A stretch of 64,000 bases of DNA from Tubulanus polymorphus (GCF_964204645.1 NC_134030.1:1967355-2031354), one strand, 5' to 3'; numbered from the stretch's first letter, positions 15,885 to 39,239 are shown. Numbers and translations: made by a program. The notes: generated by a model not told the origin, from the sequence alone.

Positions 15885-16335
15885 ATTTTTTCGATACAAA
15901 GATTTTCAATTAACTTTAAGTGTTACACCACACAAAAAAGTATCGATACTAGACTCCGCCCAAACATCCGACCCTCTTAGTTAAAACTACAGACTAAAGA
16001 TATTTTTCGATACATAGATATTTTTTTTCAATACAAATATATTTTTTTCGATACAAAGATATTTTTTTCAACTAACTTTAAGTGTTTCATCATATAAAAC
16101 AGTATTTGATACTAGACTCCGCCCAAACATCCGACCCTCTTAGTAAAAACTAAAGATAACAGACTAAGATAATTTTTGCAATACAAAGATATCTTTTTTT
16201 CGATACTTAGATAATGTTCTAACTAACTTTAAGTGTTACATCATATAAAACAGTATTTGATACTAGACTCCGCCCAAACATCCGACCCTCTTAACAAAAA
16301 CTACAATTACAACTAAGATATTTTCAACTAACTTT
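15885..16335. repeat. Three ~155-bp units with an invariant GC-rich core
   Basis: GATACTAGACTCCGCCCAAACATCCGACCCTCTTA at ~15945, 16108, 16259. Confidence 0.85.
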
Positions 16336-17424: not shown

Positions 17425-17660
17425 GCCATGAACGTAAAGCCTAGATACGTCCATGACAAAAACAGACTCCAAAACCTAAGAGTCTATGGTGTAACACTAA
17501 GCCGGAGACACAAGCAAAGAGTTGAAATATGACTGTTTTCAACTCAGGACTGCTGTGTTCATCCAGCTAAAATCCTTCAAAAGGTTAAGTTCACTCTGGA
17601 AAGCGTAAGGTTCGAAACCTCCGCACTAAAACCAGACATAACCTCGAAGGCCGTATTCAC
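17425..17660 (-). ncRNA. Candidate multi-hairpin structured RNA
   Basis: At least six consecutive stem-loops in ~235 nt, ending (minus strand) in GUUUUU and a 12-bp terminal hairpin with G-U pairs. Confidence 0.35.
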
Positions 17661-17737
17661 TCGTAATGTTAACAATATAACTTATTTCTTTCATCTATAT
17701 CATTATTTTTCATAATTGATTCATTTTTTCATCATGA

Positions 17738-19138
17738 TTAATACATTATCTTTTTCTTTTTTTTTAAATTCTTAATTAATACATTATCTTTTTCTTTTTT
17801 TTTAAATTCTTAATTAATACATTATCTTTTTCTTTTTTTCAAAATTCTTAATTAATACATTATCTTTTTCTTTTTTTTTAAATTCTTAATTAATACATTA
17901 TCTTTTTCTTTTTTTTTAAATTCTTAATTAATACATTATCTTTTTCTTTTTTTTTTAAATTCTTAATTAATACATTATCTTTTTCTTTTTTTTTTAATTC
18001 TTAATTAATACATTATCTTTTTCTTTTTAAAAATTCTTAAACAATACATTATCTTTTTCTTTTTTTTTAAATTCTTAATTAATACATTATCTTTTTCTTT
18101 TTTTTTAAATTCTTAATTAATACATTATCTTTTTCTTTTTTTTTTAATTCTTAATTAATACATTATCTTTTTCTTTTTAAAAATTCTTAAACAATACATT
18201 ATCTTTTTCTTTTTTTTTAAATTCTTAATTAATACATTATCTTTTTCTTTTTTTTTAAATTCTTAATTAATACATTATCTTTTTCTTTTTTTTTAAATTC
18301 TTAATTAATACATTATCTTTTTCTTTTTTTCAAAATTCTTAATTAATACATTATCTTTTTCTTTTTTTTTAAATTCTTAATTAATACATTATCTTTTTCT
18401 TTTTTTTTAAATTCTTAATTAATACATTATCTTTTTCTTTTTTTTTTAAATTCTTAATTAATACATTATCTTTTTCTTTTTTTCAAAATTCTTAATTAAT
18501 ACATTATCTTTTTCTTTTTTTCAAAATTCTTAATTAATACATTATCTTTTTCTTTTTTTTTAAATTCTTAATTAATACATTATCTTTTTCTTTTTTTTTA
18601 AATTCTTAATTAATACATTATCTTTTTCTTTTTTTTTTAAATTCTTAATTAATACATTATCTTTTTCTTTTTTTTTTAATTCTTAATTAATACATTATCT
18701 TTTTCTTTTTAAAAATTCTTAAACAATACATTATCTTTTTCTTTTTTTTTAAATTCTTAATTAATACATTATCTTTTTCTTTTTTTTTAAATTCTTAATT
18801 AATACATTATCTTTTTCTTTTTTTTTTAATTCTTAATTAATACATTATCTTTTTCTTTTTAAAAATTCTTAAACAATACATTATCTTTTTCTTTTTTTTT
18901 AAATTCTTAATTAATACATTATCTTTTTCTTTTTTTTTAAATTCTTAATTAATACATTATCTTTTTCTTTTTTTTTTAATTCTTAATTAATACATTATCT
19001 TTTTCTTTTTTTTAAATTCTTAATTAATACATTATCTTTTTCTTTAAATTCTTAATTAATACATTATCTTTTTCTTTTTTTTTAAATTCTTAATTAATAC
19101 ATTATTTTTTTTTTTTTTTTTTATACATAATTAATACA
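17738..19138. repeat. AT-rich minisatellite, ~38-40-bp unit, ~35 copies
   Basis: TTAATTAATACATTATCTTTTTC(T)nAAATTC repeated. Confidence 0.97.
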
Positions 19139-19639
19139 AAATTTTAGACTTCTATTAACCATCATTCATAAAACAATGAATATTCACATTAAGTGAATGA
19201 GAGTGGGGCTATTTTAAAGGAAACTTGATCTTTCATTTGTTTATTATGCACATCCTATCGTGCTGCCAACACCCGGTTTGTTAGTTAAGAAAAATGAAGT
19301 AATAAGAGGAGAATTGTTGAGGAGAATAAGAAAGTCTAGAATGTATTGAATTAACTATCAAAAGATCAAGTAATGAATTAAGTAAAGAGATCAGGCTATT
19401 TTTGAGGGCGATGTTTTATGAATGAATGAAAAAAACCTATTTTTAATTTCACTAGAAAATGATACCAGATGATGTAAATAGGACCCATTCATAACACACA
19501 GATTCACACACAAATTTACACACAGATTCACACAGGACCAACAAATACACATCACAATTGCACCTACCTTACACCACCTCCATTTACATCATACTGCATC
19601 TTTTTCGTCGTGAATTTCGGGGCCCCTTTTAAAAAATGC

Positions 19640-22085
19640 GCACTACACTATACGATTGTCCACCGGTCGCTGCTGCTGCTGCTGCTCCTCAGAATATTCC
19701 GTTTGTTAAATCAGCTGCTGCTCCTTAAAGAATTGTTCGTAAACTTGCTGCTCCTCAAATCATGTAAACTATGTCCCTCCTTGAATCATTGTTTATAAAC
19801 TATGCTGCTCCTTGAATCATTGTTTGTAAACTATACTGCTCCTTGAATCATTGTTTGTAAACTATGTCGCTTCTCGAATCATTTGCTGCTCCTGTAAACT
19901 CGCTGCTCCTTCTGTTGTTTTAACAATTGTTTGTAAACTCCTCCGTCTCTGCCAAAACTCTGTCGTAGTAAACTCTCAACTGTAGAACTCTGGAAAATTA
20001 CAATTTATAAGAATAAATCAATGAAGATTTTGTAAAAGTAATGTTAAAATGATTAATTCAATTTTGAAATCTAACTCACCATATATCACAAGAAATTGTT
20101 GTCTTGCCTTGTCTGATTGCTGCTCTATAATTGTCTTCGTTGCTGCTGAACCATATTCTGCCATCTACTGCTCATCGTGCTGTTGCTGGTAAACTCATCT
20201 TGAACTCTCCGCTCACATTTTCTGGATGTCGTCCTGGCAACAAAAATAATAATTTCTAAGAATAATTCAACATTGAAACAAGTTCCCTACGACTCTACTT
20301 GATGAGATGTGAAAAGACAATGATTTTAATTTTGACACCTAACTCACCATAACTAATCGTCTCTGTTGCTCCTAAACCAAATTCTGCTATCTACTGCTAT
20401 CTGTCTGCGGTAAACTCATTGCTGCTGCTGCTGCTGCTCCTATAAGTTATTTGTAAACTCTGTTGCTTCCAGGCTGATTATAGTATGTAAACTTTGCCCT
20501 GGTATTGTCTTCTCTAACAACTCTGATAAATATATAAAGATATATGAAAAATTGTTCAACGAATATAATTTCGAAGTCTAAACTCACCACATATCACAAG
20601 AAACTGTTGTCTTGACTCTCTCTGTTGCTTCTGTGATCTCATCTGGAACTCTCCGCTCACAAAACTGTCTCTGTTGCTTCTTAACCAAGTTCTGCCATTT
20701 ACTGCTCATCGTGCTGTTGGTGGTAAACTCATCTGGAACTCTCCGCTCACAAAACTGTCTCTGTTGCTTCTTAACCAAGTTCTGCCATTTACTGCTCATC
20801 GTGCTGTTGGTGGTAAACTCATCTGGAACTCCGCTCATATTTCTGGGTCTTCTGTTGTCGTCACAGGCGTGATTCAGTCACTGATTATCGGCCCCCCCCC
20901 CCCCCCATTTCACAGGAAGTTCATGATTGGTAAACAAGTTGGTCCATCGGTCATCAGTCAGTGTCTAGTAACAGGATAGAAGTTCATGATTGGTAAACAA
21001 GTTGGTCCATCGGTCATCAGTCAGTGTCTGGTAACAGGATAGAAGTTCATGATTGGTAAACAAGTTGGTCCATCGGTCATCAGTCAGTGTCTGGTAACAG
21101 GATAGAAGTTCATGATTGGTAAACAAGTCGGTCCATCGGTCATCAGTCAGTGTCTGGTAACAGGATAGAAGTTCATGATTGGTAAACAAGTCGGTCCATC
21201 GGTCATCAGTCAGTGTCTGGTAACAGGATAGAAGTTCATGATTGGTAAACAAGTCGGTCCATCGGTCATTAGTCAGTGTCTGGTAACAGGATAGAAGTTC
21301 ATGATTGGTAAACAAGTCGGTCCATCGGTCATCAGTCAGTGTCTGGTAACAGGATAGAAGTTCATGATTGGTAAATAAGTCGGTCCATCGGTCATCAGTC
21401 AGTGTCTGGTAACAGGATAGAAGTTCATGATTGGTAAACAAGTCGGTCCATCGGTCATCAGTCAGTGTCTGGTAACAGGATAGAAGTTCATGATTGGTAA
21501 ACAAGTCGGTCCATCGGTCATCAGTCAGTGTCTAGTAACAGGATAGAAGTTCATGATTGGTAAACAAGTTGGTCCATCGGTCATCAGTCAGTGTCTGCTA
21601 ACAGGATAGAAGTTCATGATTGGTAAACAAGTCGGTCAATTGGTCATCATCTTCTGTATGGTCGTCCGATCGGCTGCGTCTTGGAATATTCAGCTGGAAA
21701 GAAATGATATTTTTGAGGCGTACAATCTTTTCGAGCATCTTATAAATTTACATGTAAAAGTTAAATCCGTTCTTGTCGTATACAATTGCAATAATTGTAT
21801 TATTTGATCAGTGATTGTCAATAAACCCCCGATTGATTAGTATTAGTAGCGTTAGTTAATCACTATTTAAGACAGTGATCATTAACGTAGATTTCTCTGA
21901 TACAAGATCAGTTAACGTTGATTTGGTACAAAGACCACAGTGTCTTTAAAAAGACGGATCTGAGAACCTACTGAACCTACCCGACCTCGTCGTTCGAGGA
22001 GTTTGGATTTTTCGTGCAAATAAGGATATACAGCTTTTTGAGGCTGTTATTTCTAGAGGATGTTTGGCAAAAGGACATTTGATAG
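19640..22085 (-). pseudogene. Spliced minus-strand transcript unit: decayed Q/E-rich repetitive gene or lncRNA
   Basis: Four predicted introns: 21980-21694 (GTAGGT..TTCTTTCCAG), 20587-20523, 20347-20234, 20079-19990 (the last three GTGAGTT..CAG). The best frame (AESSR*VYQQQHDEQ*MAE..) has repeated stops. Outer boundaries are approximate. Confidence 0.55.
20916..21638. repeat. 63-bp minisatellite, ~11.5 copies
   Basis: Unit GAAGTTCATGATTGGTAAACAAGTCGGTCCATCGGTCATCAGTCAGTGTCTGGTAACAGGATA. Confidence 0.97.
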
Positions 22086-22102
22086 TTAGGAGCTCTAGCG
22101 AG

Positions 22103-22880
22103 GCTGGTAGCGCCACCTATTGCTCTGTCACTATTGTCTCTGCGCTCTGAGAGGAATGGATAGTTTTTTAAAGATGGATATGTTTGATTTGCGAGTTCTA
22201 GGTGACTGGTAGCGCCACCTATTACTCTTCATCGTCTCCGCAACTTTACCTGTTGCCCCAGAGAGTATTAGATGGGAGATATTTGGGGTTTGTTATGAGT
22301 TGGGAGCTATAGGAAGGCTGGTAGCGCCACCTATTATTGCTCAGGCACCATCGTCTTTGCAACTTACCAGAAGCTCTGATTTACATGATTGAATTCACAT
22401 GATTAAGTGATTTCAAGGGAATTTTTTTTAGAGTTGGGAGCTATAGGAAGGCTGGTAGCGCCACCTATTATTGCTCAGGCACCATCGTCTCCGCCCACTT
22501 ACCCGAAACTCTGATCAAAGTTTAATGTATTTTTAGGGGAGTTTTTTGAGATCTAAGAGCTATAGGAAGGCTGGTAGCGCCACCTATTGCTCAAACACCA
22601 TCATCTCCGCGCACTTACCCGCAGCTCTGATTGTATTTTATAAGGTTTGGGAGCTATAGGAAGGCTGGTAGCGCCACCTTTTATTGCTCAGGCACCATTG
22701 TCTCTGCCCACTTACCCGACTCTGATCAAAGATTAATGTATTTTTAGAGCTATATTTGGGCTGGTAGCACCACCTATTGCTAATGAACCATCATTTCCGC
22801 GCACTTACCCAAAAAGCTCTGATTGTATTTCATAAAGTTTTAGTAATTTAGGGGAGTTAGGGGGTAGTGCCACCTATTGC
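22103..22880 (-). promoter_or_regulatory. Array of 8 CTCF-like motifs, unit 1
   Basis: TAGCGCCACCT(A) or a one-mismatch variant at ~22108, 22210, 22322, 22456, 22575, 22669, 22765, 22865. The reverse strand reads AATAGGTGGCGCTA, resembling the CTCF core CCASYAGRKGGCRS. Confidence 0.6.
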
Positions 22881-23782
22881 TCAGGAATGGTTCCTTTTGC
22901 CTCTCATCAACTATCAAGTTAAACAGTCAAAATATTCATGCATGACTTTTATAACTAGTGACTAATGGATGACACCAAAGCCTTCGATGTGACAGAAAAC
23001 TTGATAGAAAACTTTTACTGGAAATCCAGAATTTTCAAACCAATCGACTAAATGTCAGTAAATCATTAGAAAATATAAACTTGTCATAAAATGAGAAGCT
23101 GAATTGAAAGAGATCTTGAAATGACTCTTTTAAGATTGAGATTTCATTAACAAAGATTGAGATTTCAGTGAGAAAATATTTGAAATATTGCAAATAGTTT
23201 CTGCAATTGATAATTCTAGTAACAAAGATTCACTGACTCAATTGATATATCAATATCAAAATACTGATAGAAGTGACACAGAAATTAGCAACAAACATTC
23301 AGAATTTCATATCTGAAGTTTCTCTCGAAGTTCATTATCAGCTTTGAAATGATACAGTGATTTTCCATCAAAAGGAAAAACACAATTTAAAGTTTTTTCC
23401 ATCAAAAAATGATTTTATTCCGTTCTGTCAAAAGGAAAGATACAATTTAAGTCTTTCCATCAAAAATAAAAACATAGTCAAGTTTTTTTCCGTCAAAAGG
23501 AAAAACGCTATCTCAAGTTCTTCCGAGTTTCACAGGAAATTGCAAACAACCAGTATTCAAACAGGTTTCTTTTCAAATCTCATTATTGTCTGGTTTTAAG
23601 AATTTTCAAACTTAAATCAGCACCAAACAAACATTCATAGAAATTGCTTATAAAAATCAAATATAAACAGATGACATCTAGATGTCAATATCATCTTGAG
23701 AAAAATTATTAATCTTCATTTTTGAAAAATTACTACATGTCATTTACTATGTCTGGTTACAACAGTTATAATGATTATGCAA

Positions 23783-24395
23783 ATGAGAGTGGAGAGAGTG
23801 CCACAAATGAATCGGGACTTTCATCTAATACGAGCACGCTGAAAATAGAAACATGTGTTAAATTGAATGAGGCAAACCATTATGTATAAGACATGAATGA
23901 GTTCGCGGTGGTCATTGAAATATGACCGGTTAAAACTGACGTTTAGAAATAAAGATTGGTGAAATATTGAATTGTAAATTTGTACTCGGAGAAGTCCCAA
24001 GACGACACCTCACCACTCATTATTTCTCACTCTAAACCGGTGTCAGTAATTAAACTCTACACAACCTCAAATTAAAACTATACATCAAAATTACTAATTT
24101 TTGGAATAGTGCCACTGAATGTATTTAAGGACTTCAGTCTAATACGAGTACAAACAAACAAACAAACAAATGAACAGAATATGATGAAAATCTGAACACA
24201 GTAAAATTGAATAAAAGCAAACCATTTATGCAAAACAAAGTTACTACATAAATGAGTTCACAAGTGGCCATTAAATTAGACCTGATTGAAAATGATAAAT
24301 TATTGGAATTGTACTCGGAAAAGTCCTGCATTTATTTCCAAAACGGCACTTCAGTTTCTAGTTCCTAATATTCTCATAGACACCGGTATCATTGA
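23783..24395 (-). ncRNA. Pair of candidate structured RNAs (element A); also at ~29599-30205 and ~35326-35930
   Basis: Two diverged paralogs (23783-24050, 24108-24395) share nested helices with compensatory changes. Most non-Watson-Crick positions become G-U on the minus strand. Confidence 0.45.
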
Positions 24396-25380
24396 TAAAC
24401 TTATATTAGGCTAAATTTATATTAGGCTAAATTTATATTAGGCTAAATTTGAAGTAAAATTTCAAAGCGTCGAAGCTTTTACTCGCAATCACTTTCATTT
24501 TCAGTAATTTCTATTTTTGATTGTTTGGTGCAAATTTATCAATCGGAATATTTGAAATGACACCAGACGTTTTGGATAAAACCTGAAGGTTGCGCAATTG
24601 ATTTTGAATCATACTACAGTGATTTTCCATCAAAAGGAAACTCACAATTTAAATCTTTTCCATCAAAAAAATGATTTTATTCTGGTCTGTCAAAAGGATA
24701 GATAAAATTTAAGTCTTTCCATCAAAAATAAAAACATACTTAAGTTTTTTCCGTCAAAAGGAAAAACGTTATCTTCAGTTCTTCCGAGTTTCACAGGAAA
24801 TTGCAAACAACCAGTTTTCAAGCAGGTTTCTTTACAAATATTTTTCAAAGTTCAGATATCAATTACAAAAAAACTGAATGAAGATTCTATATTTGCATTT
24901 GAATCACGTAAACAAAGTGAGGAACTTCAATTAATTTATTTCAACTTTTAAACTTCACTTCTAAAAGCATTTTAATAAAATCGATATTAAAATATATCGA
25001 GATTTCATAAGATGATATTTGAAATATTCACATAAATGTGGCACAAAACATTAACTAGAAATCAAGAACTTTTAAAACTAAATATCAGTAAGACATCTTG
25101 AAATGACTCTTTTTGAAATTGAGATTCCACTAAGAAAACATTAGAAATGATTGCAAATCTTAGTGCAATTGAGATTTCACTACCAAATATTAAGATTCCA
25201 GTAAGAAAACATATCTAATGATCGCAATTCCTTTGGAGATTGCAAATTTAAGCAAAAGAACTTAACACCCTTATATTGACATTTTGCAGAGACGTTTTTT
25301 AAAGGAAATATGATATGGGAACTTTGATAACATGATTAAAACAGAGCTTGCGGAGATGATCCTAATATACCTCAAGGGAC

Positions 25381-26307
25381 AAGCGTGTTCACCACTGAAC
25401 CAATAGAACTTAAGTCTAATTGGCCAGTGGTTAAACAACGCGAGATTTTATCAAAAATAAAAATATCATGAGCTAATGCTGTTAAGAACTAGCAACGATG
25501 ATACACTTTTCACAGAGCTGACAGAGACTATTTGAACTTTGTTAGCAGGATATGGCCAGGTTTTTGTTATAAACTATGACTACTTAAGGTTGTCCAACAT
25601 TGAAAAGTAGAATCTCTTATATTGACGTGTTTTAAAGGAACTATGATATCGAAACATTGATAACATGATTAAACCAGAGCTTGCGGAGATGATCTTACAA
25701 TACATCAATAAGTCAAGGGACAAGATAAGCGTGTTCACCACTGGACCAATAGAATATAAGTCTAATTCGTCAGTGGTTAAACAGCGCGAGATTTTATTAA
25801 ACAAAATATCAACAGCTATATTTATCCTTAAACAGAACTTAACAGAGATGACCTTATTATAAGTTAAGGCACAAGACAAGCGTGCCAACCACTGATTCAA
25901 TAGAACTTAAGTCTAATTGACCAGTGGTTAAACAGCGCGAGATTTTATTAAATGAAATATCAAGAGCTTTTATTTATCCTATATCAAACAGTAACTAGCA
26001 TCAATAATAAACCTTAAACAGTACTTAACAGAGATGATCTTATTTTAAGTAAAGGCAGAAGACGAGCGTGTTCACCACTGGACAAATAGAACTTTAGTCT
26101 AATTGACCAGTGGTTAAACAGCGCGAGATTTTATTAAACAATATATCAACAGCTATATTTATCCTATATTGAGCAGTAAGCATCAATAATAACACCTTAA
26201 ACATTACTTTACAGAGATGATCTTATTTAAAGTAAGGCCACGAGACGAGCGTGTTCACCACTGGACAAATAGAACTTTAGTCTAATTGACCAGTGGTTAA
26301 ACAGGGC
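25381..26307. ncRNA. Cluster of five ~59-nt hairpins (element B; pre-miRNA-sized); 4 more at 31181-31950 and 3 more at 36870-37457
   Basis: GCGTGTTCACCACTG..CCAATAGA-7-nt loop-TCTAATTGG.CAGTGGTTAAACA.CGC, a stem of ~24 bp, embedded in ~150-350-bp sub-repeats. Confidence 0.4.
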
Positions 26308-28064
26308 GAGATTTTTCTAAAAATACAAAATATCATGAGCTAATCCTGTTAAGAAGTAGCAACGATGATACACTTGTATCAGAGCTGACAGAGACGATAT
26401 TTATATGAACTTTGTTAGCGGGATTTATCGGGGCATTAGACTAGTGATTATACTCATTGATATAAGTTTTTGTAACAAACTATGACAACTTTTCCAACAT
26501 AGGAAAATAGATATCTCCTATACTGAATCAGTTATTTATTCTATTGCACAGCTTTACAAAGACGATCTTTACTGGGAATTTGATATAAGAATAAAAAATG
26601 GGGCCACGGAGACAATGATTAGTTAGTACTAGTCCGAGTGAACTAGCGTCCACTCGGACTAGTGACTAGATAGCTTATAATAGTAATAGTTATATAAGTA
26701 CGACTGCTAATATTTTAACTAATATACAGTAAAACATAACTTACAGCGCCATCTATTTTCAGACAAGGTAAGCGTGCTAACTAGTAAAACGGCTAAAATA
26801 TACACTTAATAACAGTAATATATCGACTAACATAATTATCCTTATATAAAATAGATACTAAATCTAAAACACAACTTATTTACAAAATTGTATTTACATT
26901 AAATAAAACTAAAGCTAATGATTATTATGTATTATTATGTATTAAATAACTGATTGACTGAGATATAATAATAAAATAGTAATTACATATTTACATTAAT
27001 TACATATTTATATTAATTACATATTTACATTAATTACATATTTATATAACATATATTTACACATTTATTTATATTGAGTAAAGATGAGATATTCTAAGAC
27101 GCTATATTGAGTGAAAAATGAAATTCCAACACAGAGCTAACAGAGACCAAGGTTTGAGGGTATTTTGTTAGCAAGATTTTGGCCGAAGGTTTTTGTTATG
27201 AAGCTAATCTACTAACAAGAGAAAAGTCATTCTAAGATCTTATCCCAAGTTATCTTATCCTAAGTTATCTTATCCTAAGTAACTATTCTAAACTAGTGCG
27301 GTGCAGACACAGAACATCGTTTAACGATTTTGTGTCATTTGGATATTTTTTTTTTTCAGTTAGAGATATTAAGCGTTAAAAATCTTAAGTTTTGAGATGA
27401 GCTTTTAAAAAGCTTTTCAACACCTCCTTTATGTGTATTTCTACACGTTTTTGGTTTTGTGGACTCTCAGCACTCCACTCTCTCTCTTTCTTACCCCCCA
27501 AAATATAGAATGATAAATCAAACTTAGCTTTTTTGTATTGCGAAGTCACAGTTCCTCTTGGATCCACTTCGCATCTGCTGGTTTCTGCTGGCTTGGAATG
27601 ATTGGTTCTCATCTGTTCGTCCGATCAGCTGCATCTTGGAAATATTCACCTGGAAGTAAATGATATTTTTGAGGCGTACAATCTTTTCGAGCATCTTATA
27701 AATTTACATGTAAAAGTTAAATCTGTCCTTGTCGTTTACAATTGCAATAATTGTATTATTTGATCAGTGATTGTCAATAAACCCCCGATTGATTAGTATT
27801 AGTAGCGTTAGTTAATCACTATTTAAGACAGTGATCATTAACGTAGATTTCTCTGATACAAGATCAGTTAACGTTGATTTGGCACAAAGACCACAGTGTC
27901 TTTAAAAAGACATTGAGAACCTACTGAACCTACCCGACCTTGTCGTTCGAGGAGTTTGGATTTTTCGTGCAAATAAGGATATACTGCTTTTTGAGGCTGT
28001 TATTTCTAGAGGATGTTTGGCAAAAGGACACATGAGGTTTTTGATAGTTAGGAGCTCTAGTGAG

Positions 28065-28708
28065 GCTGGTAGCGCCACCTATTGCTCTGTCACTATTGTC
28101 TCTGCGCTCTGAGAGGAATGGATAGTTTTTTAAAGATGGATATGTTTGATTTGCGAGTTCTAGGTGACTGGTAGCGCCACCTATTACTCTTCATCGTCTC
28201 CGCAACTTTACCTGTTGCCCCGGAGAGTATTAGATGGGAGATATTTGGGGTTTGTTAAGAGTTGGGAGCTATAGGAAGGCTGGTAGCGCCACCTATTATT
28301 GCTCAGGCACCATCGTCTCCGCCCACTTACCCGAAACTCTGATCAAAGTTTAATGTATTTTAGGGGAGTTTTTTGAGATCTAAGAGCTATAGGAAGGCTG
28401 GTAGCGCCACCTATTGCTCAAACACCATCATCTCCGCCCACTTACCCGCAGCTCTGATTGTATTTTATAAGGTTTGGGAGCTATAGGAAGGCTGGTAGCG
28501 CCACCTATTATTGCTCAGGCACCATTGTCTCTGCCCACTTACCCGACTCTGATCAAAGTCTAATGTATTTTTAGAGCTATATTTGGGCTGGTAGCGCCAC
28601 CTATTGCTAATGAACCATCATTTCCGCGCACTTACCCAAAAAGCTCTGATTGTATTTCATAAAGTTTTAGTAATTTAGGGGAGTTAGGAGGTAGTGCCAT
28701 CTATTGCT
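28065..28708 (-). promoter_or_regulatory. Array of 7 CTCF-like motifs, unit 2
   Basis: Same motif at ~28070, 28172, 28284, 28402, 28496, 28592, 28692. Confidence 0.6.
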
Positions 28709-31700
28709 CAGGAATGGTTCCCTCTGCCTCTCGTCAAGTATCAAGTTAAACAGTCAAAATATTCATGCATGACTTTTATAATTAGTGACTCATGGATGAC
28801 ACCAAAGATACAAAACTTGATAGAAAACTTTTACTGGTAATCCCGAATTTTCAAACCAATCGACTAAATGTCAGTAAATCATTAGAAAATATAAACTTGT
28901 CATAAAATGAGAAGCTGAATTGAAAGAGATCTTGAAATGACTCTTTTAAGATTGAGATTTCACTAACAAAGATTGAGATTTCAGTGAGAAAATATTTGAA
29001 ATATTGCAAAGACTTTTGCAGTTGATATTCTATTAACAAAGATTCACTGACTCAATTGATATATCAATATCAAAATACTGATAGAAGTGACACAGAAATT
29101 AGCAACAAACATTCAGAATTTCATATCTGAAGTTTCTCTCGAAGTTCATTATCAGCTTTGAAATGATACAGTGATTTTCCATCAAAAGGAAAAACACAAT
29201 TTAAAGTTTTTCCATCAAAACAAATGATTTTATGCCGTTCTGTCAAAAGGAAAGATACAATTTAAGTCTTTCCATCAAAAATAAAAACATACTTAAGTTT
29301 TTTTCCGTCAAAAGGAAAAGCGCTATCTCAAGTTCTTCCGAGTTTCACAGGAAATTGCCAACAACCAGTATTCAAACAGGTTTCTTTTCAAATCTCATTA
29401 TTGTCTGGTTTTAAGAATTTTCAAACTTAAATCAGCACCAAACAAACATTCATAGAAATTGCTTATAAAATTCAGATAAAAACAGATGACATCAAGATGT
29501 CAATATCATCTTGAGAAAGATTAATTAATCTTCATTTTTGAAATATTACTACATGTAATTTACTATGTCTGGTTACAACAGTTATAATGATTATGCAAAT
29601 GAGAGTGGAGAGAGTACCACAAATGAATCGGGACTTTCATCTAATACGAGCACGCTGAAAATAGAAACATGTGTTAAATTGAATGAGGCAAACCATTATG
29701 TATAAGACATGAATAAGTCTGCGGTGGTCATTGAAATATGACCGGTTAAAACTGACGTTTAGAAATAAAGATTGGTGAAATATTGAATTGTAAATTTGTA
29801 CTCGGAGAAGTCCCAAGACGACACCCTCACCACTCATTATTTCTCACTCAAAACCGGTGTCAGTAATTAATCTCTACACAACCTCAAATTAAAACTATAC
29901 ATCAAAATTACTAATTTTTGGAATAGTGCCACTGAAAGTATTTAAGGACTTCAGTCTAATACGAGTACAAACAAACAAACAAATGAACAGAATATGATGA
30001 AAATCTGAACACAGTAAAATTGAATAAAAGCAAACCATTTATGCAAAACAAAGTTACTACATAAATGAGTTCACAAGTGGTCATTAAATCAGACCTGATT
30101 GAAAATGATAAATTATTGGAATTGTACTCGGAGAAGTCCTGCATTTATTTCCAAAACGGCACTTCAGTTTCTAGTTCCTAATATTCTCATAGACACCGGT
30201 ATCATTGATAAACTTATATTAGGCTAAATTTATATTAGGCTAAATTTGAAGTAAAGTTTCAAAGCGTCAAAGCTTTTACTCGCAATCACTTTTATTTTCA
30301 GTAATTTCTATTTTTGATTGTTTGGTGCAAATTTATCAATCGGAATATTTGAAATGACACCAGACGTTTTGGATAAAACCTGAAGGTTGCGCAATTGATT
30401 TTGAATCATACTACAGTGATTTTCCATCAAAAGGAAAAAACACAATTAAAATTTTTTCCATCAAAAAAATGATTTTATTCCATTCTGTCAAAAGGATGGG
30501 TACAATTTAAGTCTTTCCATCAACAATAAAAACATACTTAAGTTTTTTCCGTCAAAAGGAAAAACGTTATCTTAAGTTCTTCAGAGTTTCACAGGAAATT
30601 GCAAACAACCAGTTTTCAAGCAGGTTTCTTTACAAATATTTTTCAAAGTTCAGATATCAATTACAAAAAAACTGAATGAAGATTCTATATTTGCATTTGA
30701 ATCACATGAACAAAGTGAGGAACTTCAATTGATTTAATTCAACTTTTAAACTTCACTTCTAAAAGTATTTTAATAAAATCGATATTAAAATATATCGAGA
30801 TTTCATAAGATGATATTTGAAATATTGACATAAATGTGGCACAAAACATTGACTAGAAATCAAGAACTTTTAAAACTAAATGTCAGTAAGACATCTTGAA
30901 ATGACTCTTTTTTAAATTGAGATTCCACTAAGAAAACATTAGAAATGATTGCAAATCTTAGTGCAATTGAGATTTCACTACCAAATATTAAGATTCCAGT
31001 AAGAAAATATATCTAATGATCGCAATTCCTTTGGAGATTGCAAATTTAAGCAAAAGAACTTAACACCCTTATATTGACATTTTGCAGAGACGTTTTTTAA
31101 AGGAAATATGATATAGGAACTTTGATAACATGATTAAAACAGAGCTTGCGGAGATGATCCTAATATACCTCAAGGGACAAGCGTGTTCACCACTGAACCA
31201 ATAGAACTTAAGTCTAATTGGTCAGTGGTTAAACAACGCTTGATTTTCTTTAAAATACAAAATATCATGAGCTAATCCTGTACAGAACTAGCAACGATGA
31301 TACACTTTTCACAGAGCTGACAGAGACTATTTGAACTTTGTTAGCAGGATATGGCCACGTTTTTGTTATAAACTATGACTACTTAAGGTTGTCCAACATT
31401 GAAAAGTAGAATCTCTTATATTGACGTGTTTTAAAGGAACTATGATATCGAAACATTGATAACATGATTAAACCAGAGCTTGCGGAGATGATCTTACTAT
31501 ACATCAATAAGTCAAGGGACAAGACAAGCGTGTTCACCACTGGACCAATAGAATATAAGTCTAATTGGTCAGTGGTTAAACAGCGCGAGATTTTATGAAA
31601 CAAAATATCAACAGCTATATTTATCCTATATTGAGCAGTAAACATCAATAATACACCTTAAACATTACTTAACAGAGATAATCTTATTTTAAGTAAGGCC

Positions 31701-33689
31701 ACGAGACGAGCGTGTTCACCACTTGACAAATAGAACTTAAGTCTAATTGACCAGTGGTTAAACAGCGCGAGATTTTATTAAACAAAATATCAACAGCTAT
31801 GTTTTTCCTATATTGAGCAGTAAACATCAATAATACACCTTAAACATTACTTAACAGAGATGATCTTATTTAAAGTAAGGCCACGAGACGAGCGTGTTCA
31901 CCACTGGACAAATAGAACTTTAGTCTAATTGACCAGTGGTTAAACAGCGCGAGATTTTTCTAAAGATACAAAATATCATGAGCTAATCCTGTATAGAACT
32001 AGCAACGATGATACACTTGTATCAGAGCTGACAGAGACGATATTTATATGAACTTTGTTAGCGGGATTTATCGGGGCATTAGACTAGTGATTATACTCAT
32101 TGATATAAGTTTTTGTAACAAACTATGACAACTTTTCCAACATAGGAAAATAGATATCTCCTATAATGAATCAGTTATTTATTCTATTGTAGAGCTTTAC
32201 AAAGACGATCTTTACTGGGAATTTGATATAAGAATAAAAAATGGGGCCACGGAGACAATGATTAGTTAGTACTAGTCCGAGTGAACTAGCGTCCACTGGG
32301 ACTAGTGACTAGATAGCTTATAATAGTAATAGTTATATAAGTACGACTGCTGATATTTCAACTAATATACAGTAAAACACAACTTACAGCGCCATCTATT
32401 TTCAGACGAGGTAAGCGTGCTAACTAGTAAAACGGCTAAAATATACACTTAATAACAGTAATATATCGACTAACATTTAATTATCCTTATATAAAATAGA
32501 TACTAAATCTAAAACACAACTTATTTACAAAATTGTATTTACATTAAATAAAACTAAAGCTAATGATTATTAACTGTATTAAATAACTGATTGACTGAGA
32601 TATAATAATAAAATAGTAATTACGTATTTACATTAATTACATATTTATATTAATTACATATTTACATTAATTACATATGAATATAACATATATTTACACA
32701 TTTATTTATATTGAGTAAAGATGAGATATTCTAAGACGCTATATTGAGTGAAAAATGAAATTCCAACACAGAGCTAACAGAGACCAAGGTTTGAGGGTAT
32801 TTTGTTAGCAAGATTTTGGCCGAAGGTTTTTGTTATGAAGCTAATCTACTAACAAGAGAAAAGTCATTCTAAGATCTTATCCCAAGTTATCTTAAGTTAT
32901 CTTATCCTAAGTAACTATTCTAAACTAGTGCGGTGCAGACACAGAACATCGTTTAACGATTTTGTGTCATTTGGATATTTTTTTTTTTCAGTTAGAGATA
33001 TTAAGCGTTAAAAATCTTAAGTTTTGAGATGAGCTTTTAAAAAGCTTTTCAACACCTCCTTTATGTGTATTTCTACACGTTTTTGGTTTTGTGGACTCTC
33101 AGCACTCCACTCTCTCTCTTTCTTACCCCCCAAAATATAGAATGATAAATCAAACTTAGCTTTTTTGTATTGCGAAGTCACAGTTCCTCTTGGATCCACT
33201 TCGCATCTGCTGGATTCTGCTGGCTTGGAATGATTGGTTCTCATCTGTTCGTCCGATCGGCTGCGTCTTGAAATATTCAGCTGAAAGTAAATGATATTTT
33301 TGAGGCGTACAATCTTTTCGAACATCTTATAAATTTACATGTAAAAGTTAAATCCGTCCTTGTCGTATACAATTGCAATAATTGTATTATTTGATCAGTG
33401 ATTGTCAATAAACCCCCAATTGATTAGTATTAGTAGCGTTAGTTAATCACTATTTAAGACAGTGATCATTAACGTAGATTTCTCTGATACAAGATCAGTT
33501 AACGTTGATTTGGTACAAAGACCACAGTGTCTTTAAAAAGACGGATCTGAGAACCTACTGAACCTACCCGACCTCGTCGTTCGAGGAGTTTGGATTTTTC
33601 GTGCAAATAAGGATATACAGCTTTTTGAGGCTGTTATTTCTAGAGGATGTTTGGCAAAAGGACATTTGATAGTTAGGAGCTCTAGCGAG

Positions 33690-34466
33690 GCTGGTAGCGC
33701 CACCTATTGCTCTGTCACTATTGTCTCTGCGCTCTGAGAGGAATGGATAGTTTTTTAAAGATGGATATGTTTGATTTGCGAGTTCTAGGTGACTGGTAGC
33801 GCCACCTATTACTCTTCATCGTCTCCACAACTTTACCTGTTGCCCCGGAGAGTATTAGATGGGAGATATTTGGGGTTTGTTAAGAGTTGGGAGCTGTAGG
33901 AAGGCTGGTAGCGCCACCTATTATTGCTCAGGCACCATCCTCTTTGCAACTTACCAGAAGCTCTGATTTACATGATTGAATTCACATGATTAAGTGATTT
34001 CAAGGGAATTTTTTAGAGTTGGGAGCTATAGGAAGGCTGGTAGCGCCACCTATTATTGCTCAGGCACTATCGTCTCTGCCCACTTACCCGAAACTCTGAT
34101 CAAAGTTTAGTGTATTTTTAGGGGAGTTTTTTTAGATCTAAGAGCTATAGGAAGGCTGGTAGCGCCACCTATTGCTCAAACACCATCATCTCCGCCCACT
34201 TACTCGCAGCTCTGATTGTATTTTATAAGGTTTAGGAGCTATAGGAAGGCTGGTAGCGCCACCTATTATTGCTCAGGCACCAATGTCTCTGCCCACTTAC
34301 CCGACTCTGATCAAAGATTAATGTATTTTTAGAGCTATATTTGGGCTGGTAGCGCCACCTATTGCTAATAAACCATCATCTCCGCGCACTTACCCAAAAA
34401 GCTCTGATTGTATTTCATAAAGTTTTAGTAATTTAGGGGAGTTAGGGGGTAGTGCCACCTATTGCT
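33690..34466 (-). promoter_or_regulatory. Array of 8 CTCF-like motifs, unit 3
   Basis: Same motif at ~33695, 33797, 33909, 34041, 34160, 34254, 34350, 34450. Confidence 0.6.
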
Positions 34467-37400
34467 CAGGAATGGTTCCTTTTGCCTCTCATCAAGTATC
34501 AAGTTAAACAGTCAAAATATTCATGCATGACTTTTATAACTAGTGACTAATGGATCACACCAAAGCCTTCGATGTGACACAAAACTTGATAGAAAACTTT
34601 TACTGGAAATCCAGAATTTTCAACTTGTCATAAAATGAGAAGCTGAATTGAAAGAGATCTTGAAATGACTCTTTTAAGATTGAGATTTCATTAACAAAGA
34701 TTGAGATTTCAGTGAGAAAATATTTGAAATATTGCAAATAGTTTCTGCAATTGATAATTCTAGTAACAAAGATTCACTGACTCAATTGATATATCAATAT
34801 CAAAATACTGATAGAAGTGACACAGAAATTAGCAACAAACATTTAGAATTTCATATCTGAAGTTTCTCTCAAAGTTCATTATCAGCTTTGAAATGATACA
34901 GTGATTTTCCATCAAAAGGAAAAACACAATTTAAAGTTTTTCCATCAAAAAATGATTTTATGCCGTTCAGTCAAAAGGAAAGATACAATTTAAGTCTTTC
35001 CATCAAAAATAAAAACATACTTAAGTTTTTCTCCGTCAAAAGGAAAAACGTTATCTCAAGTCCTTCCGAGTTTCACAGGAAATTGCAAACAACCAGTATT
35101 CAAACAGGTTTCTTTTCAAATCTCATTATTGTCTGGTTTTAAGAATTTTCAAACTTAAAGCAGCACCAAACAAACATTCATAGAAATTGCTTATAAAATT
35201 CAAATATAAACAGATGACATCTAGATGTCAATATCATCTTGAGAAAAATTAATTAATCTTCATTTTTGAAAAATTACTACATGTCATTTACTATTGCTGA
35301 TTACAACAGTTATAATGATTATGCGAATGAGAGTGGAGAGAGTGCCACAAATGAATCAGGACTTTCATCTAATACGAGCACGCTGAAAATAGAAACATGT
35401 GTTAAATTGAATGAGGCAAACCATTATGTATAAGACATGAATGAGTTCGCAGTGGTCATTGAAATATGACCGGTTAAAACTGACGTTTAGAAATAAAGAT
35501 TGGTGAAATATTGAATTGCAAATTTGTACTCGGAGAAGTCCCAAGACGACACCTCACCACTCATTATTTCTCGCTCTAAACCGGTGTCAGTAATTAAACT
35601 CTACACAACCTCAAATTAAAACTATACATCAAAATTACTAATTTTTGGAATAGTGCCACTGATTGTATTTAAGGACTTCAGTCTAATACGAGTACAAACA
35701 AACAAACAAATGAACAGAATATGATGAAAATCTGAACACAGGAAAATTGAATAAAAGCAAACCATTTATGCAAAACAAAGTTACTACATAAATGAGTTCA
35801 CAAGTGGTCATTAAATCAGACCTGATTGAAAATGATAAATTATTGGAATTGTACTCGGAGAAGTCCTGCATTTATTTCCAAAACGGCACTTCAGTTTCTA
35901 GTTCCTAATCTTTATAGACACCGGTATCATTGATAAACTTATATTAGGCTAAATTTATATTAGACTAAATTGAAGTAAAGTTTCAAAGCGTCAAAGCTTT
36001 TACTCGCAATCACTTTTATTTCTCGTAATTTCTATTTTTGATTGTTTAGTGCAAATTTATCAATCGGAATATTTGAAATGACACCAGACGTTTTGGATAA
36101 AACCTGAAGGTTGCGCAATTGATTTTGAATCATACTACAGTGATTTTCCATCAAAAGGAAAAAACACAATTTAAATCTTTTCCATCAAAAAAATGATTTT
36201 ATTCCATTCTGTCAAAAGGATAGATACAATTTAAGTCTTTCCATCAAAAATAAAAACATACTTAAGTTTTTTTTCCATCAAAAGGAAAAATGTTATCTTA
36301 GGTTCTTCCGGGTTTCACAGGAAATTGTATGAACAAAGTGAGAAACTTCAATTGATTCAATTCAACTTTTAAACTTCACTTCTAAAAGCATTTTAATAAA
36401 ATCGATATCAAAATTTTGAGATTTCAGTAAGATGATATTTGATTAATTGCAAATTGAGATTTCAGTAACAAAGATGAAACGATCTTTTTTTTTCAGAAAA
36501 TTTCAATGAAATATTGACATAAATGTGACACAAAACATTGACTAGAAATCAAGTACTTTTAAAACTAAATGTCAGTAAGACATCTTGAAATGACTCTTTT
36601 TGAAATTGAGATTCCACTAAGAAAACAATAGAAATGATTGCAAATCTTAGTGCAACTGAGATTTCACTACCAAATATTAAGATTCCAGTAAGAAAACATA
36701 TCTAATGATCGCAATTCCTTTGGAGATTGCAATTTTAAGTAAAAGGTCTTAACTCCCTAATATTGACATTTTTTCAGAGACGTTTTTAAAGGAAATATTA
36801 TATAGGAACTTTGATAACATGATTAAAACAGAGCTTGCGGAGATGATCCTAATATACCTCAAGGGACAAGCGTGCTAACCACTGAACCAATAGAACTTAA
36901 GTCTAATTGACCAGTGGTTAAACAGCGCGAGATTTTATCAAAAATACAAAATATCATGAGCTAATGCTGTTAAGAACTAGCAACGATGATACACTTTTCA
37001 CAGAGCTGACAGAGACTATTTGAACTTTGTTAGCAGGATATGGCCAGGTTTTTGTTATAAACTATGACAACTTAAGGTTGTCCAACATTGAAAAGTAGAA
37101 TCTCTTATATTGACGTGTTTTAAAGGAACTATGATATCGAAACATTGATAACATGATTAAACCAGAGCTTGCGGAGATGATCTTACTATACATCAATAAG
37201 TCAAGGGACAAGATAAGCGTGTTCACCACTGGACCTATAGAATATAAGTCTAATTGGTCAGTGGTTAAACAGCGGGAGATTTTATTAAACAAAATATCAA
37301 CAGCTATATTTATCCTATATTGAGCAGTAAGCATCAATAATACACCTTAAACATTACTTAACAGAGATAATCTTATTTTAAGTAAGGCCACGAGACGAGC

Positions 37401-38223
37401 GTGTTCACCACTGGACAAATAGAACTTAAGTCTAATTGACCAGTGGTTAAACAGCGCGAGATTTTTCTAAAAATACAAAATATCATGAGCTAATCCTGTA
37501 TAGAACTAGCAACGATGATACACCTGTATCAGAGCTGACAGAGACGATATTTACATGAACTTTGTTAGCGGGATTTATCGGGGCATTAGACTAGTGATTA
37601 TACTCATTGATATAAGTTTTTGTAACAAACTATGACAACTTTTCCAACATAGGAAAATAGATATCTCCTATACTGAATCAGTTATTTATTCTATTGCAGA
37701 GCTTTACAAAGACGATCTTTACTGGGAATTTGATATAAGAATAAAAAATGGGGCCACGGAGACGATGATTAGTTAGTACTAGTCCGAGTGAACTAGCGTC
37801 CACTGGGACTAGTGACTAGATAGCTTATAATAGTAATAGTTATATAAGTACGACTGCTGATATTTTAAATAATATACAGTAAAACACAACTTACAGCGCC
37901 ATCTATTTTCAGACGAGGTAAGCGTGCTAACTAGTAAAACGGCTAAAATATACGAGTATAATATATGAGTGAAAAATGAAATTCCAACACAGAGCTAACA
38001 GAGACCAAGGTTTGAGGGTATTTTGTTAGCAAGATTTTGGCCGAAGGTTTTTGTTATGAAGCTAATCTACTAGCAAGAGTTATCCCAAGTTATCTTATCC
38101 TAAGTTATCTTATCCTAAGTAACTATTCTAAACTAGTGCGGTGCAGACACAGAACATCGTTTAACGATTTTGTGTCATTTGTATATTTTTTTTTTCAGTT
38201 AGAGATATTAAGCGTTAAAAATC

Positions 38224-39239
38224 TTAAGTTTTGAGATGAGCTTTTAAAAAGCTTTTCAACACCTCCTTTATGCGTATTTCTACACGTTTTTGGTCTTGTG
38301 GACTCTCGGCACTCCACTCTCTCTCTCTTGCCCCCCAAATAGAGAAGGATAATTCAAACTTAGCTTTTTTGTATTGAGATCATCATTCACCGGTAGGTAG
38401 TTACAGTAGTTCATCATCTACTAGTTCAAGTAGCATTTCATTTTCTAGGATTCTAACTTTCTGCGACTGCAAATATAAGAAAATCATGATAAGTTTCTCG
38501 GAGTGAAAATGATTAACGTTAAAATATGAAGCACAGTGAAAAATATCGTTCAAACGCTACAAAGAAAAACATGGATTATTACTAAATGAAAACAGTAATA
38601 TGAAAAATGGCAATTTATGAAGATGATTTTATGAAAAAATTTATTAAAATGTACTCTACAACTCAATGGGATGTTACTGCATGGGTAAAACAATTAACTA
38701 AATTTTGAAATCAAGCTTTCTCACCATAATATAGCGATTTGAAGCGGATGTCCCCATCTAAAATTCAGCCGGCGGCATGGCTTGGAATAGGATTTCATTT
38801 ACCATTTCAGCATTCAGACCGCTCGGAGGTTTAGACAGGAGTGCGGCGATTCTGAGTGAATGGCGCGAAATGCTTTCAAACCTATTGACGCGTTACCGGA
38901 TTAGATCGGGAGACTATTGAGGGACCGAGTTCGGCATTCCTGCAGTGGCCAATCACAGAGAGCATCGTCCTTGAATAGATTCACCGCGAGGTCGAGTTTG
39001 ACTTCACCGCCGCCCGTTCCGCTGGAATAAACACCGGGTCACACACGAGATACCCTTTCATATTCATATTCTTAGCGTAACATTTCGATAGAAGGAATAA
39101 ATCTTAGATATCTCAATTAGAGCTTTTTATAGCAGTTACATTTCGTGGATACGAATTCAAATTTCTCATCGTACGTGTCTCTCGGAGGAGTCCTAATTTA
39201 GTACCGGTATCATCGTTGTTACACTTACATTTATCGTAT
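38224..39239 (-). pseudogene. Decayed spliced gene of uncertain family (possibly Mab-21/cGAS-like)
   Basis: Exons 39239-38725 and 38466-38224 have canonical splice sites. Protein-like frames (..EVKLDLAVNLFKDDALCDWPLQEC.., ..SQYKKAKFELSFSIWGAREREW..LKSFLKAHLKT*) are interrupted by several stops and frameshifts. Confidence 0.55.

What the first reader, a model, noticed from the sequence alone, without database searches (positions are those of the whole stretch)
21663..38376. Macrosatellite whose unit combines a CTCF-like motif array, structured-RNA candidates and spliced exons
Seen: three ~5.1-6.0-kb tandem units with no transposase, reverse transcriptase or other long ORF. Each is built from the same ordered modules: minus-strand exon/intron, 7-8 co-oriented CTCF-like motifs, two TTTTCCATCAAAA clusters, two paralogous multi-helix elements, 3-5 ~59-nt hairpins, one 13-bp hairpin, a single CAGCGCCATCTA motif and a captured exon. 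Module copy numbers vary between units. Known: mammalian DXZ4 and FIRRE combine tandem repeats, CTCF arrays and non-coding transcription, and miR-430/miR-427 are tandemly amplified hairpin loci. Inference: this may be an invertebrate locus coupling a chromatin anchor to a polycistronic ncRNA host, sitting between housekeeping genes.
Basis: partly seen in the sequence, partly recalled or inferred. Interest (0 to 1): 0.85.

Follow-up and report, generated by a model that had tools for sequence, protein, structure and literature searches.

The report
Seven-locus non-coding macrosatellite with CTCF motifs
A ribbon-worm chromosome carries a real three-copy array of about 5.8-kb non-coding units, each with a cluster of CTCF-type motifs and conserved hairpins, and it is one of seven similar loci near chromosome ends, so it resembles the mammalian D4Z4 and DXZ4 repeats, but no binding or RNA data could be obtained.

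Summary
The array is real. Window 21659-38376 holds three tandem units of 5955, 5632 and about 5130 bp, 96-98% alike. They have no long ORF, no coding signal and no Rfam or tRNA match.

The locus is not unique. The genome has exactly seven such loci on six chromosomes. Each has a left arm, 1-4 units (18 in total) and a right arm with a conserved CCAAT-plus-E2F-like block. All seven lie in the terminal fifth of their chromosome. No transposon hallmark was found.

The CTCF reading holds at sequence level:
- The genome encodes CTCF.
- The canonical consensus occurs 661 times against 3 for the control.
- The array's variant motif recurs in unrelated sequence.
- Motif columns are kept better (0.89) than the unit average (0.78).

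The ~59-nt hairpins (28 copies, only in this family) stay paired best on the minus strand. Support for the Element A fold is weak.

The "exons" are not supported. The reading frame, the ATG and the splice donor are not conserved between loci.

Earlier notes of this scan describe other CTCF-motif repeats in this genome, but not this family.

The parts
15700..21658 (.). Left arm, shared with the six paralogous loci. It includes window-specific expansions of a 38-bp minisatellite (17724-19138), a 90-bp repeat (20638-20831) and a 63-bp minisatellite (20916-21649).
21659..27613 (.). Macrosatellite unit 1 (5955 bp)
27614..33245 (.). Macrosatellite unit 2 (5632 bp)
33246..38376 (.). Macrosatellite unit 3 (about 5130 bp). 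It ends about 75 bp short of a full unit.
21776..21957 (.). Most conserved non-coding block of the unit (about 96% identical over 16 units from 7 loci, against 78% unit-wide between subfamilies). It has stop codons in all frames. The same block lies at 27731-27912 in unit 2.
22103..22880 (+). Cluster of 8 co-oriented CTCF-like motifs in subrepeats of about 96-130 bp. The equivalent clusters are at 28065-28710 and 33690-34470.
23353..23578 (+). First TTTTCCATCAAAA cluster (33-bp subrepeats). The second is at 24615-24839. Later units carry them at 29167-29393, 30412-30637, 34897-35121 and about 36136-36290.
23757..24400 (-). Element A1 (23757-24064) and its diverged paralogue A2 (24075-24400). 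The copies in the other units lie at 29573-30213 and 35301-35938.
25367..26313 (-). Five hairpins of about 59 nt, read in 81-nt windows starting at 25367, 25713, 25864, 26050 and 26233. Unit 2 has four (31165, 31512, 31694, 31876). Unit 3 has three (36854, 37201, 37383).
26628..26663 (.). 13-bp-stem hairpin, perfect in unit 1. The copies at 32271-32306 and 37778-37813 carry one mismatch.
26746..26758 (+). Single weaker CTCF-like site per unit (GCGCCATCTATTT). The others are at 32389 and 37896.
27495..27650 (-). Exon-like segment at the unit junction. It has a conserved acceptor-like tract, but the donor, ATG and frame are not conserved. The second junction copy is at about 33127-33282.
38377..39116 (.). 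Right arm, present exactly once at each of the seven loci. Its core (38830-39020) is a conserved GC-rich block with a CCAAT box (38947-38956) and an E2F-consensus site (38862-38870).

Best explanation
The array is one member of a closed family of seven non-coding loci.

Shown:
- Each locus has a single left arm, 1-4 tandem units of 4.1-6.0 kb, and a single right arm. There are 18 units in all.
- The family forms two subfamilies: the window with C8, and five loci that are 91-97% alike across four chromosomes.

Inferred from the pattern:
- The family spread by segmental duplication or ectopic exchange between chromosome-end regions.
- Each array then changed by unequal crossing-over and gene conversion. 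Units are mostly more alike within a locus than between loci, and internal modules such as hairpins and motif subrepeats expand and contract.

Shown: against about 22% divergence between subfamilies, a few blocks stay 92-96% identical in every copy. These are a block at the unit start, the CTCF-motif cluster, Element A1, the hairpins and the right-arm core.

Inferred: this points to selection on DNA or RNA function rather than on protein.

Proposed mechanism (inferred, not shown):
- The right-arm CCAAT/E2F block acts as a promoter that sends a long non-coding transcript leftwards, on the minus strand, through the units.
- The hairpins fold from that strand and may be cut into small RNAs.
- The 5-8 co-oriented CTCF sites per unit make each locus a multivalent CTCF platform or boundary, as at D4Z4 and DXZ4.
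For: Structure of the family:
- The tandem units are shown.
- The seven collinear loci with shared arms are shown.
- The right-arm core has exactly 7 copies, with 7 of 7 candidates scored.
- All 25 unit-junction candidates lie in the same seven loci, and C3 has four units.
- All seven loci lie within the terminal 19% of their chromosome, and five lie within 2 Mb of an end (coordinates and contig lengths). Under a uniform distribution this gives p of about 0.001, by my own arithmetic.

Non-coding:
- Searches show no long ORF, no periodicity, no domain and no conserved frame.

Constraint:
- Conserved blocks are shown.

CTCF:
- The motif matches 12 of 14 consensus positions. It occurs only in the array and only on one strand.
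- A CTCF exon in the genome matches human CTCF zinc fingers 1-4 at E = 1.9e-68, collinear with residues 266-376.
- The consensus occurs 661 times against 3 for the control. The variant AGCGCCACCTANTG occurs 170 times against 1, with T, G and C all common at N.
- The exact 15-mer also sits in at least two unrelated repeat families and in single-copy sites that share no flanking homology.
- Motif columns are 0.89 identical, against 0.81 for the flanks and 0.78 unit-wide.

Minus-strand RNA:
- The hairpins fold better on the minus strand.
- 97.8% of cells are paired. Three pairs vary only through U.G, which would be A.C on the plus strand. One pair switches between A-U and G-C. Only 4 of 500 shuffles reach the observed covariation score.
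- Element A1 gives z = -2.65 on the minus strand against -1.48 on the plus strand.

Promoter-like arm:
- The CCAAT and TTT[C/G]GCGC sites are kept across the loci. The E2F-type site is present in all seven; the CCAAT box is aligned in six and displaced in C8.
- Homology ends shortly to the right of this block, so any conserved target lies on the array side.
Against: - There is no RNA, ChIP or Hi-C evidence.
- The hairpin loop is as conserved as the arms, which is unlike typical microRNA genes. No Rfam family matches.
- The covariation rests on a few inherited events. Four copies carry an A.C mismatch at the covarying pair.
- The splice donor is not conserved, so a spliced host RNA is unsupported.
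- The motif misses two consensus positions.
- Some non-motif blocks nearby are just as invariant, so the constraint need not be due to CTCF.
- The excess conservation of the motif is about 2-3 standard errors only.
- Earlier notes of this scan say that CTCF-motif arrays in another repeat family of this genome decay neutrally.
- The orientation of the promoter-like block is inferred, not shown.
Confidence: 0.45

Rival explanations
1. It is a low-copy, non-autonomous mobile element, for example a rolling-circle or other DNA transposon composite. Its internal macro-repeat carries CTCF motifs and hairpins as selfish cargo or as cis-signals for its own propagation. The conserved blocks would then serve the element, not the host.
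For: - Five loci on four chromosomes are 91-97% alike, which suggests a fairly recent spread.
- Sequence beyond the arms is unrelated between loci.
- Earlier notes of this scan describe a Helentron-type family in this genome that scatters CTCF-motif arrays (not checked here).
- Conserved hairpins could be recognition structures for a replication or transposition protein.
Against: - There is no transposase, Rep or RT coding capacity.
- No terminal inverted repeats or LTR-like direct repeats join the two arms.
- The ends of the copies are graded by relatedness rather than meeting at one sharp terminus, and no target-site duplication was seen.
- Only seven copies exist, all complete, with no fragments or solo pieces despite 22% divergence between subfamilies.
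Confidence: 0.25
2. It is a functionless segmental duplication in recombination-prone subterminal DNA. The patches of high similarity would come from gene conversion between loci, and the motifs and hairpins would be passengers.
For: - All seven loci lie towards chromosome ends.
- Patchy boundaries differ between pairs of copies.
- Local minisatellites expand freely.
- The TTTTCCATCAAAA clusters are poorly conserved and are not a genome-wide motif.
Against: - The same short blocks are conserved in all 16 units compared, across both subfamilies. Conversion would have to hit the same 100-180-bp patches repeatedly at all seven loci.
- Changes in the hairpin keep pairing on one strand only.
- Both arms are retained at all seven loci.
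Confidence: 0.2
3. It is a protein-coding gene family with small exons hidden inside the units.
For: - Splice-like signals occur on both strands.
- An exon-like 156-nt segment with an ATG lies at the unit junction.
Against: - None of 138 windows shows 3-base periodicity.
- The junction segment loses its ATG, frame and donor in other loci.
- The conserved blocks have stops in all frames.
- Pfam gives only repeat-driven noise.
Confidence: 0.03
4. The array is an assembly artefact, that is, a single unit wrongly triplicated.
For: This could not be checked with reads.
Against: - The units differ by 2-4% and by distinct indels and module counts (8/7/8 motifs, 5/4/3 hairpins).
- Four other loci independently carry arrays of 3-4 units.
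Confidence: 0.02

Closest known systems
Human D4Z4 macrosatellite (4q35 and 10q26, with dispersed relatives)
   Same: - A kb-scale tandem unit.
- Paralogous arrays on several chromosomes, sharing flanking homology.
- A subterminal position.
- CTCF-dependent insulator activity is reported for D4Z4 (PMC2639723), and the macrosatellite class is reviewed in PMC5687341. Here only the motifs are shown.
   Different: - D4Z4 is GC-rich and each unit encodes the DUX4 retrogene. Here the units are AT-rich (31-36% GC) and non-coding.
- The arrays here have 1-4 units, not tens.
- There is no sequence homology.
- Binding is untested.
Mammalian DXZ4 and FIRRE
   Same: - A non-coding tandem array with CTCF sites in every unit.
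- Association with a promoter.
- CTCF binding is retained while the rest of the sequence diverges quickly (PMC3491370, PMC3218863, PMC3287207, PMC4391730). Here, likewise, the motif columns are kept better than the unit average.
   Different: - DXZ4 and FIRRE are single X-linked loci tied to X inactivation. This is a seven-locus autosome-like family in a nemertean.
- It has many motifs per unit (5-8) rather than about one.
- It adds conserved hairpins.
- There is no evidence of allele-specific chromatin.
Tandem microRNA clusters (miR-430 and miR-427 type)
   Same: - Repeated hairpins of about 60 nt on a single strand in tandem copies.
- Structure kept through wobble-compatible changes.
   Different: - There are only 0-5 hairpins per 5-kb unit.
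- The loop is as conserved as the arms.
- There is no match to any Rfam microRNA family.
- No small-RNA data exist for it.
Transposon-borne CTCF sites (rodent B2 SINEs; a Helentron family noted earlier in this genome)
   Same: Repeats multiply CTCF-type motifs.
   Different: - This family has seven complete copies and no recognisable termini or coding partner.
- Its motifs are retained above background rather than decaying with it.

Membership tests
Macrosatellite | Head-to-tail tandem repeat with a kb-scale unit | tested here: met
   Three units of 5.1-6.0 kb, 96-98% alike
Macrosatellite | Copy number varies between individuals | not testable with these tools
Paralogous loci carry 1, 3 or 4 units, which shows that unit number changes over evolutionary time only.
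CTCF-bound repeat array (DXZ4, D4Z4, FIRRE type) | Units carry sequences that fit the CTCF consensus | tested here: met
   The motif read as GCAATAGGTGGCGC fits 12 of 14 positions of CCASYAGRKGGCRS. There are 25 sites, all on one strand.
CTCF-bound repeat array (DXZ4, D4Z4, FIRRE type) | The organism has CTCF and uses this motif | tested here: met
   A CTCF exon at G000:C3:3.43 Mb matches PDB CTCF at E = 1.9e-68. The consensus occurs 661 times against 3 for the control, and the array's variant 170 times against 1.
CTCF-bound repeat array (DXZ4, D4Z4, FIRRE type) | Motif retained while the surrounding sequence diverges | tested here: met
   Identity is 0.89 for motif columns, 0.81 for flanks and 0.78 unit-wide. 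The margin is modest, and some neighbouring non-motif blocks are equally invariant.
CTCF-bound repeat array (DXZ4, D4Z4, FIRRE type) | CTCF occupancy and boundary or looping activity | not testable with these tools
   This needs ChIP or CUT&Tag and Hi-C.
Tandem microRNA cluster | Stable hairpin of about 60 nt conserved as a structure on one strand | tested here: met
   z = -4.4 to -6.7 on the minus strand. 97.8% of cells are paired, U.G-only changes occur at three pairs, and one pair covaries.
Tandem microRNA cluster | Arms more conserved than the loop; membership of a known family | tested here: not met
   The loop is almost invariant. Rfam gives no match at gathering score or at E up to 1.
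Tandem microRNA cluster | Small RNAs of about 22 nt from the arms | not testable with these tools
   No read data could be reached.
Transposable element (TIR, LTR, Helitron or Helentron) | Terminal inverted or direct repeats, shared sharp termini, target-site duplication | tested here: not met
   No repeat joins the arms. The ends differ between pairs of copies.
Transposable element (TIR, LTR, Helitron or Helentron) | Coding capacity, or many dispersed and fragmentary copies | tested here: not met
   There are no long ORFs or domains. Exactly seven complete loci exist.
Protein-coding exons | Conserved frame, codon periodicity and both splice sites kept | tested here: not met
   No periodicity was found. 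The donor, ATG and frame are lost in other loci, and only the acceptor-like tract is invariant.

The most novel reading that the evidence does not exclude
A nemertean counterpart of D4Z4 and DXZ4: a family of seven subterminal macrosatellite loci, each driven by a cell-cycle-type (CCAAT/E2F) promoter. Each locus would act both as a multivalent CTCF anchor and as the host of a lineage-specific small-RNA hairpin. This would mean that chromatin-organising macrosatellites arose independently outside vertebrates.
Probability: 0.2. Interest if true: 0.8.

Novelty: new variant of a known kind. Interest (0 to 1): 0.5.

Why it matters
Direct evidence for how CTCF shapes genomes in spiralians is almost absent (PMC10658181). 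A small, closed family of intact loci that concentrate 5-8 co-oriented CTCF-type sites per 5-kb unit offers seven natural test sites. Their unit numbers differ (1, 3 or 4), so CTCF binding, insulation and repeat-derived RNA can be compared across them in a non-model bilaterian. If the loci bind CTCF, the link between macrosatellites and genome folding would be older, or more often convergent, than the mammalian examples suggest. If they do not, the family shows how far motif-level resemblance can mislead.

Tried and rejected
- Rfam at gathering score (whole window) and at E up to 1 (15500-28300) gave only spurious hits on a palindromic MITE at 15527-15646. There are no tRNAs.
- Exact-protein look-ups of two array ORFs found nothing on record.
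- Pfam on nine array ORFs gave noise only.
- A codon-periodicity scan was negative.
- Searches for TIRs and LTRs were negative.
- The candidate Helitron-like left terminus seen in two loci is absent from the window.
- TTTTCCATCAAAAGGAAA is not enriched in the genome outside the family, so I dropped the idea that it is a general factor site.
- A covariance model of the hairpin found no strong copy outside the seven loci. Only 150 of many candidates were scored.
Because no reason such as 'human-like' was given, I went on using own-genome and local tools on this stretch.
- The script machine was lost, so the planned tree of units was not built. Relationships rest on the identity matrix.
- Searching earlier findings by sequence returned nothing.
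Full report
**1. The observation**

Tandem Repeats Finder and a self-comparison show three head-to-tail units at 21659-27613, 27614-33245 and 33246-38376. A multiple alignment puts them at 96-98% identity. No ORF of 110 aa or more lies inside the units. The only one in 21000-39000 (179 aa, 20965-21504) is a reading of the 63-bp minisatellite just upstream of unit 1. No Rfam family or tRNA matches.

- 25 CTCF-like cores, all on the + strand and all inside the array, against 0.15 expected by chance.
- 22 TTTTCCATCAAAA-type sites in two clusters per unit.
- 5, 4 and 3 hairpins of about 59 nt in the three units.
- A 13-bp-stem hairpin, perfect only in unit 1.
- One weaker CAGCGCCATCTA-type site per unit.

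The neighbouring genes are a TTC21/IFT139 homologue, an M24 methionine aminopeptidase and a PAP2-superfamily gene.

**2. The locus is not unique**

The whole genome (268 Mb, 77 contigs) was searched. Earlier notes of this scan name it the ribbon worm Tubulanus polymorphus; I did not check this. The same layout was found at six other places:
- C8 at 16.15 Mb.
- C2 at 30.98 Mb.
- C3 at 1.91-1.93 Mb.
- C1 at 4.57 Mb.
- C1 at 25.99 Mb.
- C5 at 1.72 Mb.

Every locus is collinear with the window:
- A left arm, equal to window 15700-21658 when compared with C8.
- Then 1-4 units.
- Then a right arm, equal to window 38377-39116.

The right-arm core occurs exactly seven times in the genome, with all seven candidates scored. 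All 25 unit-junction candidates fall in the same seven loci, which gives 3+3+3+4+3+1+1 = 18 units. A covariance model of the hairpin found 28 strong copies, all in these loci (only 150 candidates were scored).

The identity matrix shows two subfamilies:
- The window and C8 are 84-87% alike.
- Five loci on four chromosomes are 91-97% alike.
- The two subfamilies are 78% alike.

Units are mostly more alike within a locus (98-99% in C2). In C1a and C3, however, some units are closer to units at the same rank in another locus. This suggests that a multi-unit array predates part of the spread and was later homogenised to different degrees.

All seven loci lie in the terminal 19% of their chromosome, and five lie within 2 Mb of an end. 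Under a uniform distribution I estimate p at about 0.001.

**3. Is it a transposon?**

I found no hallmark of one:
- No coding capacity.
- No inverted or direct repeats joining the arms.
- No single sharp terminus. The closest pairs of copies share a little more flank than distant pairs, and different pairs share different extras.
- No fragments or solo pieces, despite 22% divergence between subfamilies.

A low-copy mobile composite is not excluded. Segmental duplication between chromosome-end regions fits better.

**4. Coding or not**

None of 138 windows of 150 nt shows 3-base periodicity of variable sites. The exon-like segment at the unit junction (27495-27650, minus strand) has an invariant acceptor-like tract. 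Its ATG is lost even in the window's second junction. Its interior differs between loci by out-of-frame indels and a repeat of about 21 bp. The GTAAG donor is missing in the five-locus subfamily. The most conserved blocks have stops in every frame. The exon part of the finding is therefore not supported.

**5. Constraint**

Against 78% identity between subfamilies, several blocks of 60-180 bp are 92-96% identical in all 16 units compared:
- The unit-start block at 27731-27912.
- Parts of the motif cluster.
- 29029-29127.
- Element A1 at 29580-29718.
- The hairpins.
- 32917-33058.

Gene conversion could homogenise patches. It would, however, have to hit the same short patches at all seven loci.

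**6. The CTCF reading**

Read on the minus strand, the motif is GCAATAGGTGGCGC. By my own comparison with the textbook consensus CCASYAGRKGGCRS, it fits 12 of 14 positions.

- The genome encodes CTCF. A degenerate pattern for a conserved finger peptide hit once. The exon there matches human CTCF zinc fingers 1-4, collinear with residues 266-376, at E = 1.9e-68.
- The canonical consensus GCGCCMYCTRSTGG occurs 661 times against 3 for the reversed control. The control contains one more CpG, so the ratio is somewhat flattered.
- The array's variant belongs to the same over-represented set. AGCGCCACCTANTG occurs 170 times against 1, with T, G and C all common at N.
- The exact 15-mer recurs in at least two unrelated repeat families and in single-copy sites with no flanking homology.
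- Across 92 motif copies in 17 units, the 18-22-nt core is 90% or more conserved. This count is biased, because copies were chosen by similarity to the motif.
- In the unbiased orthologous comparison, motif columns are 0.89 identical, against 0.81 for ungapped flanks and 0.78 unit-wide.
- A neighbouring non-motif block is equally invariant.

[quoted passage not shown] In spiralians, motif enrichment at domain borders is reported only for a squid (PMC10658181). Binding at this locus is untested.

**7. The RNA reading**

The hairpins fold better on the minus strand, with z = -6.7 and -4.4 against -4.5 and -3.3 on the plus strand. In 27 copies:
- 97.8% of cells pair.
- Three pairs vary only between Watson-Crick and U.G. 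These would be A.C on the plus strand.
- One pair switches between A-U (11), G-C (8) and G.U (3), with 4 A.C exceptions.
- 4 of 500 shuffles reach the observed covariation score.

These changes are few events inherited by related copies, so the support is real but modest. The loop is nearly invariant, which is unusual for a microRNA.

Element A1 gives z = -2.65 on the minus strand and -1.48 on the plus strand. It has no compensatory pair within A1, and only 1-3 when A2 is added. I rate that fold as weakly supported.

**8. The right arm**

Its core is the best-conserved part across all seven loci. It keeps a CCAAT box in six loci, displaced in C8. It also keeps a site that is TTTCGCGC in the window and TTTGGCGC in the other subfamily when read on the minus strand. 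Both fit the E2F consensus TTTSGCGC; the consensus is from general knowledge.

On the minus strand the order is CCAAT, about 85 bp of spacer, the E2F site, then the array. Homology ends within 100-700 bp on the other side. I therefore infer a promoter facing the array.

**9. Verdict**

The exon claims fail.

The closest analogue is D4Z4:
- It is multi-locus.
- It is subterminal.
- Its arrays share flanks.
- It has CTCF-dependent insulator activity (PMC2639723).

DXZ4 and Firre are next (PMC3491370, PMC3218863, PMC4391730).

There is no homology to any of these, so this is an analogue and not a member.

**10. Limits**

- The script machine failed, so no tree was built.
- Earlier notes of this scan report other CTCF-motif repeats in this genome. 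I used them as context only.

Noticed in passing
window 13631-13942 (+) and 41625-41927 (+): An acidic exon that ends in KDEL (an ER-retention signal) lies left of the element. It has an 82% identical paralogue right of the element that lacks the KDEL ending. The whole 23-kb locus therefore sits between two tandem copies of a gene fragment.
   Followed up: partly
G000:C3:3430346-3430708 (L041:1270-1632): This is an exon of the genome's CTCF gene, covering zinc fingers 1-4 and part of finger 5. Its best PDB match is human CTCF at E = 1.9e-68.
   Followed up: yes
L031-L034, L037, L040 (G000 C8 and C6 sites): An unrelated dispersed repeat carries the identical 15-mer TAGCGCCACCTATTG in a conserved context. 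A third repeat at C1:30.936-30.940 Mb carries it three times.
   Followed up: partly
window 43599-43938: A young, high-copy element of about 340 bp. More than 40 copies are 96-97% alike across the genome, and its roughly 100-bp ends are inverted repeats. It is a MITE-like transposon.
   Followed up: no
window 15527-15646 and 39290-39470: Two palindromic MITE-like elements border the family's arms. The first gives spurious weak hits to plant microRNA models in Rfam.
   Followed up: no
window 14627-14837 and 15101-15446: Dispersed repeats of about 135 bp and about 155 bp, the latter in tandem. Each has dozens of copies genome-wide.
   Followed up: no
window 22100-22900, minus strand: Each CTCF-like motif lies about 25-40 nt downstream of a 5'-splice-site-like AG|GTRAG on the minus strand.
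   Followed up: partly
G000:C1:4573286-4578760 (second unit of the C1 4.57-Mb array): This unit is aberrant. It is only 62-75% identical to all other units and lacks the hairpin.
   Followed up: no
window 52019-52575 and 62568-62985: Two related 24-bp minisatellites lie about 10 kb apart, inside a larger duplicated segment (51568-52468 against 62109-63021).
   Followed up: no
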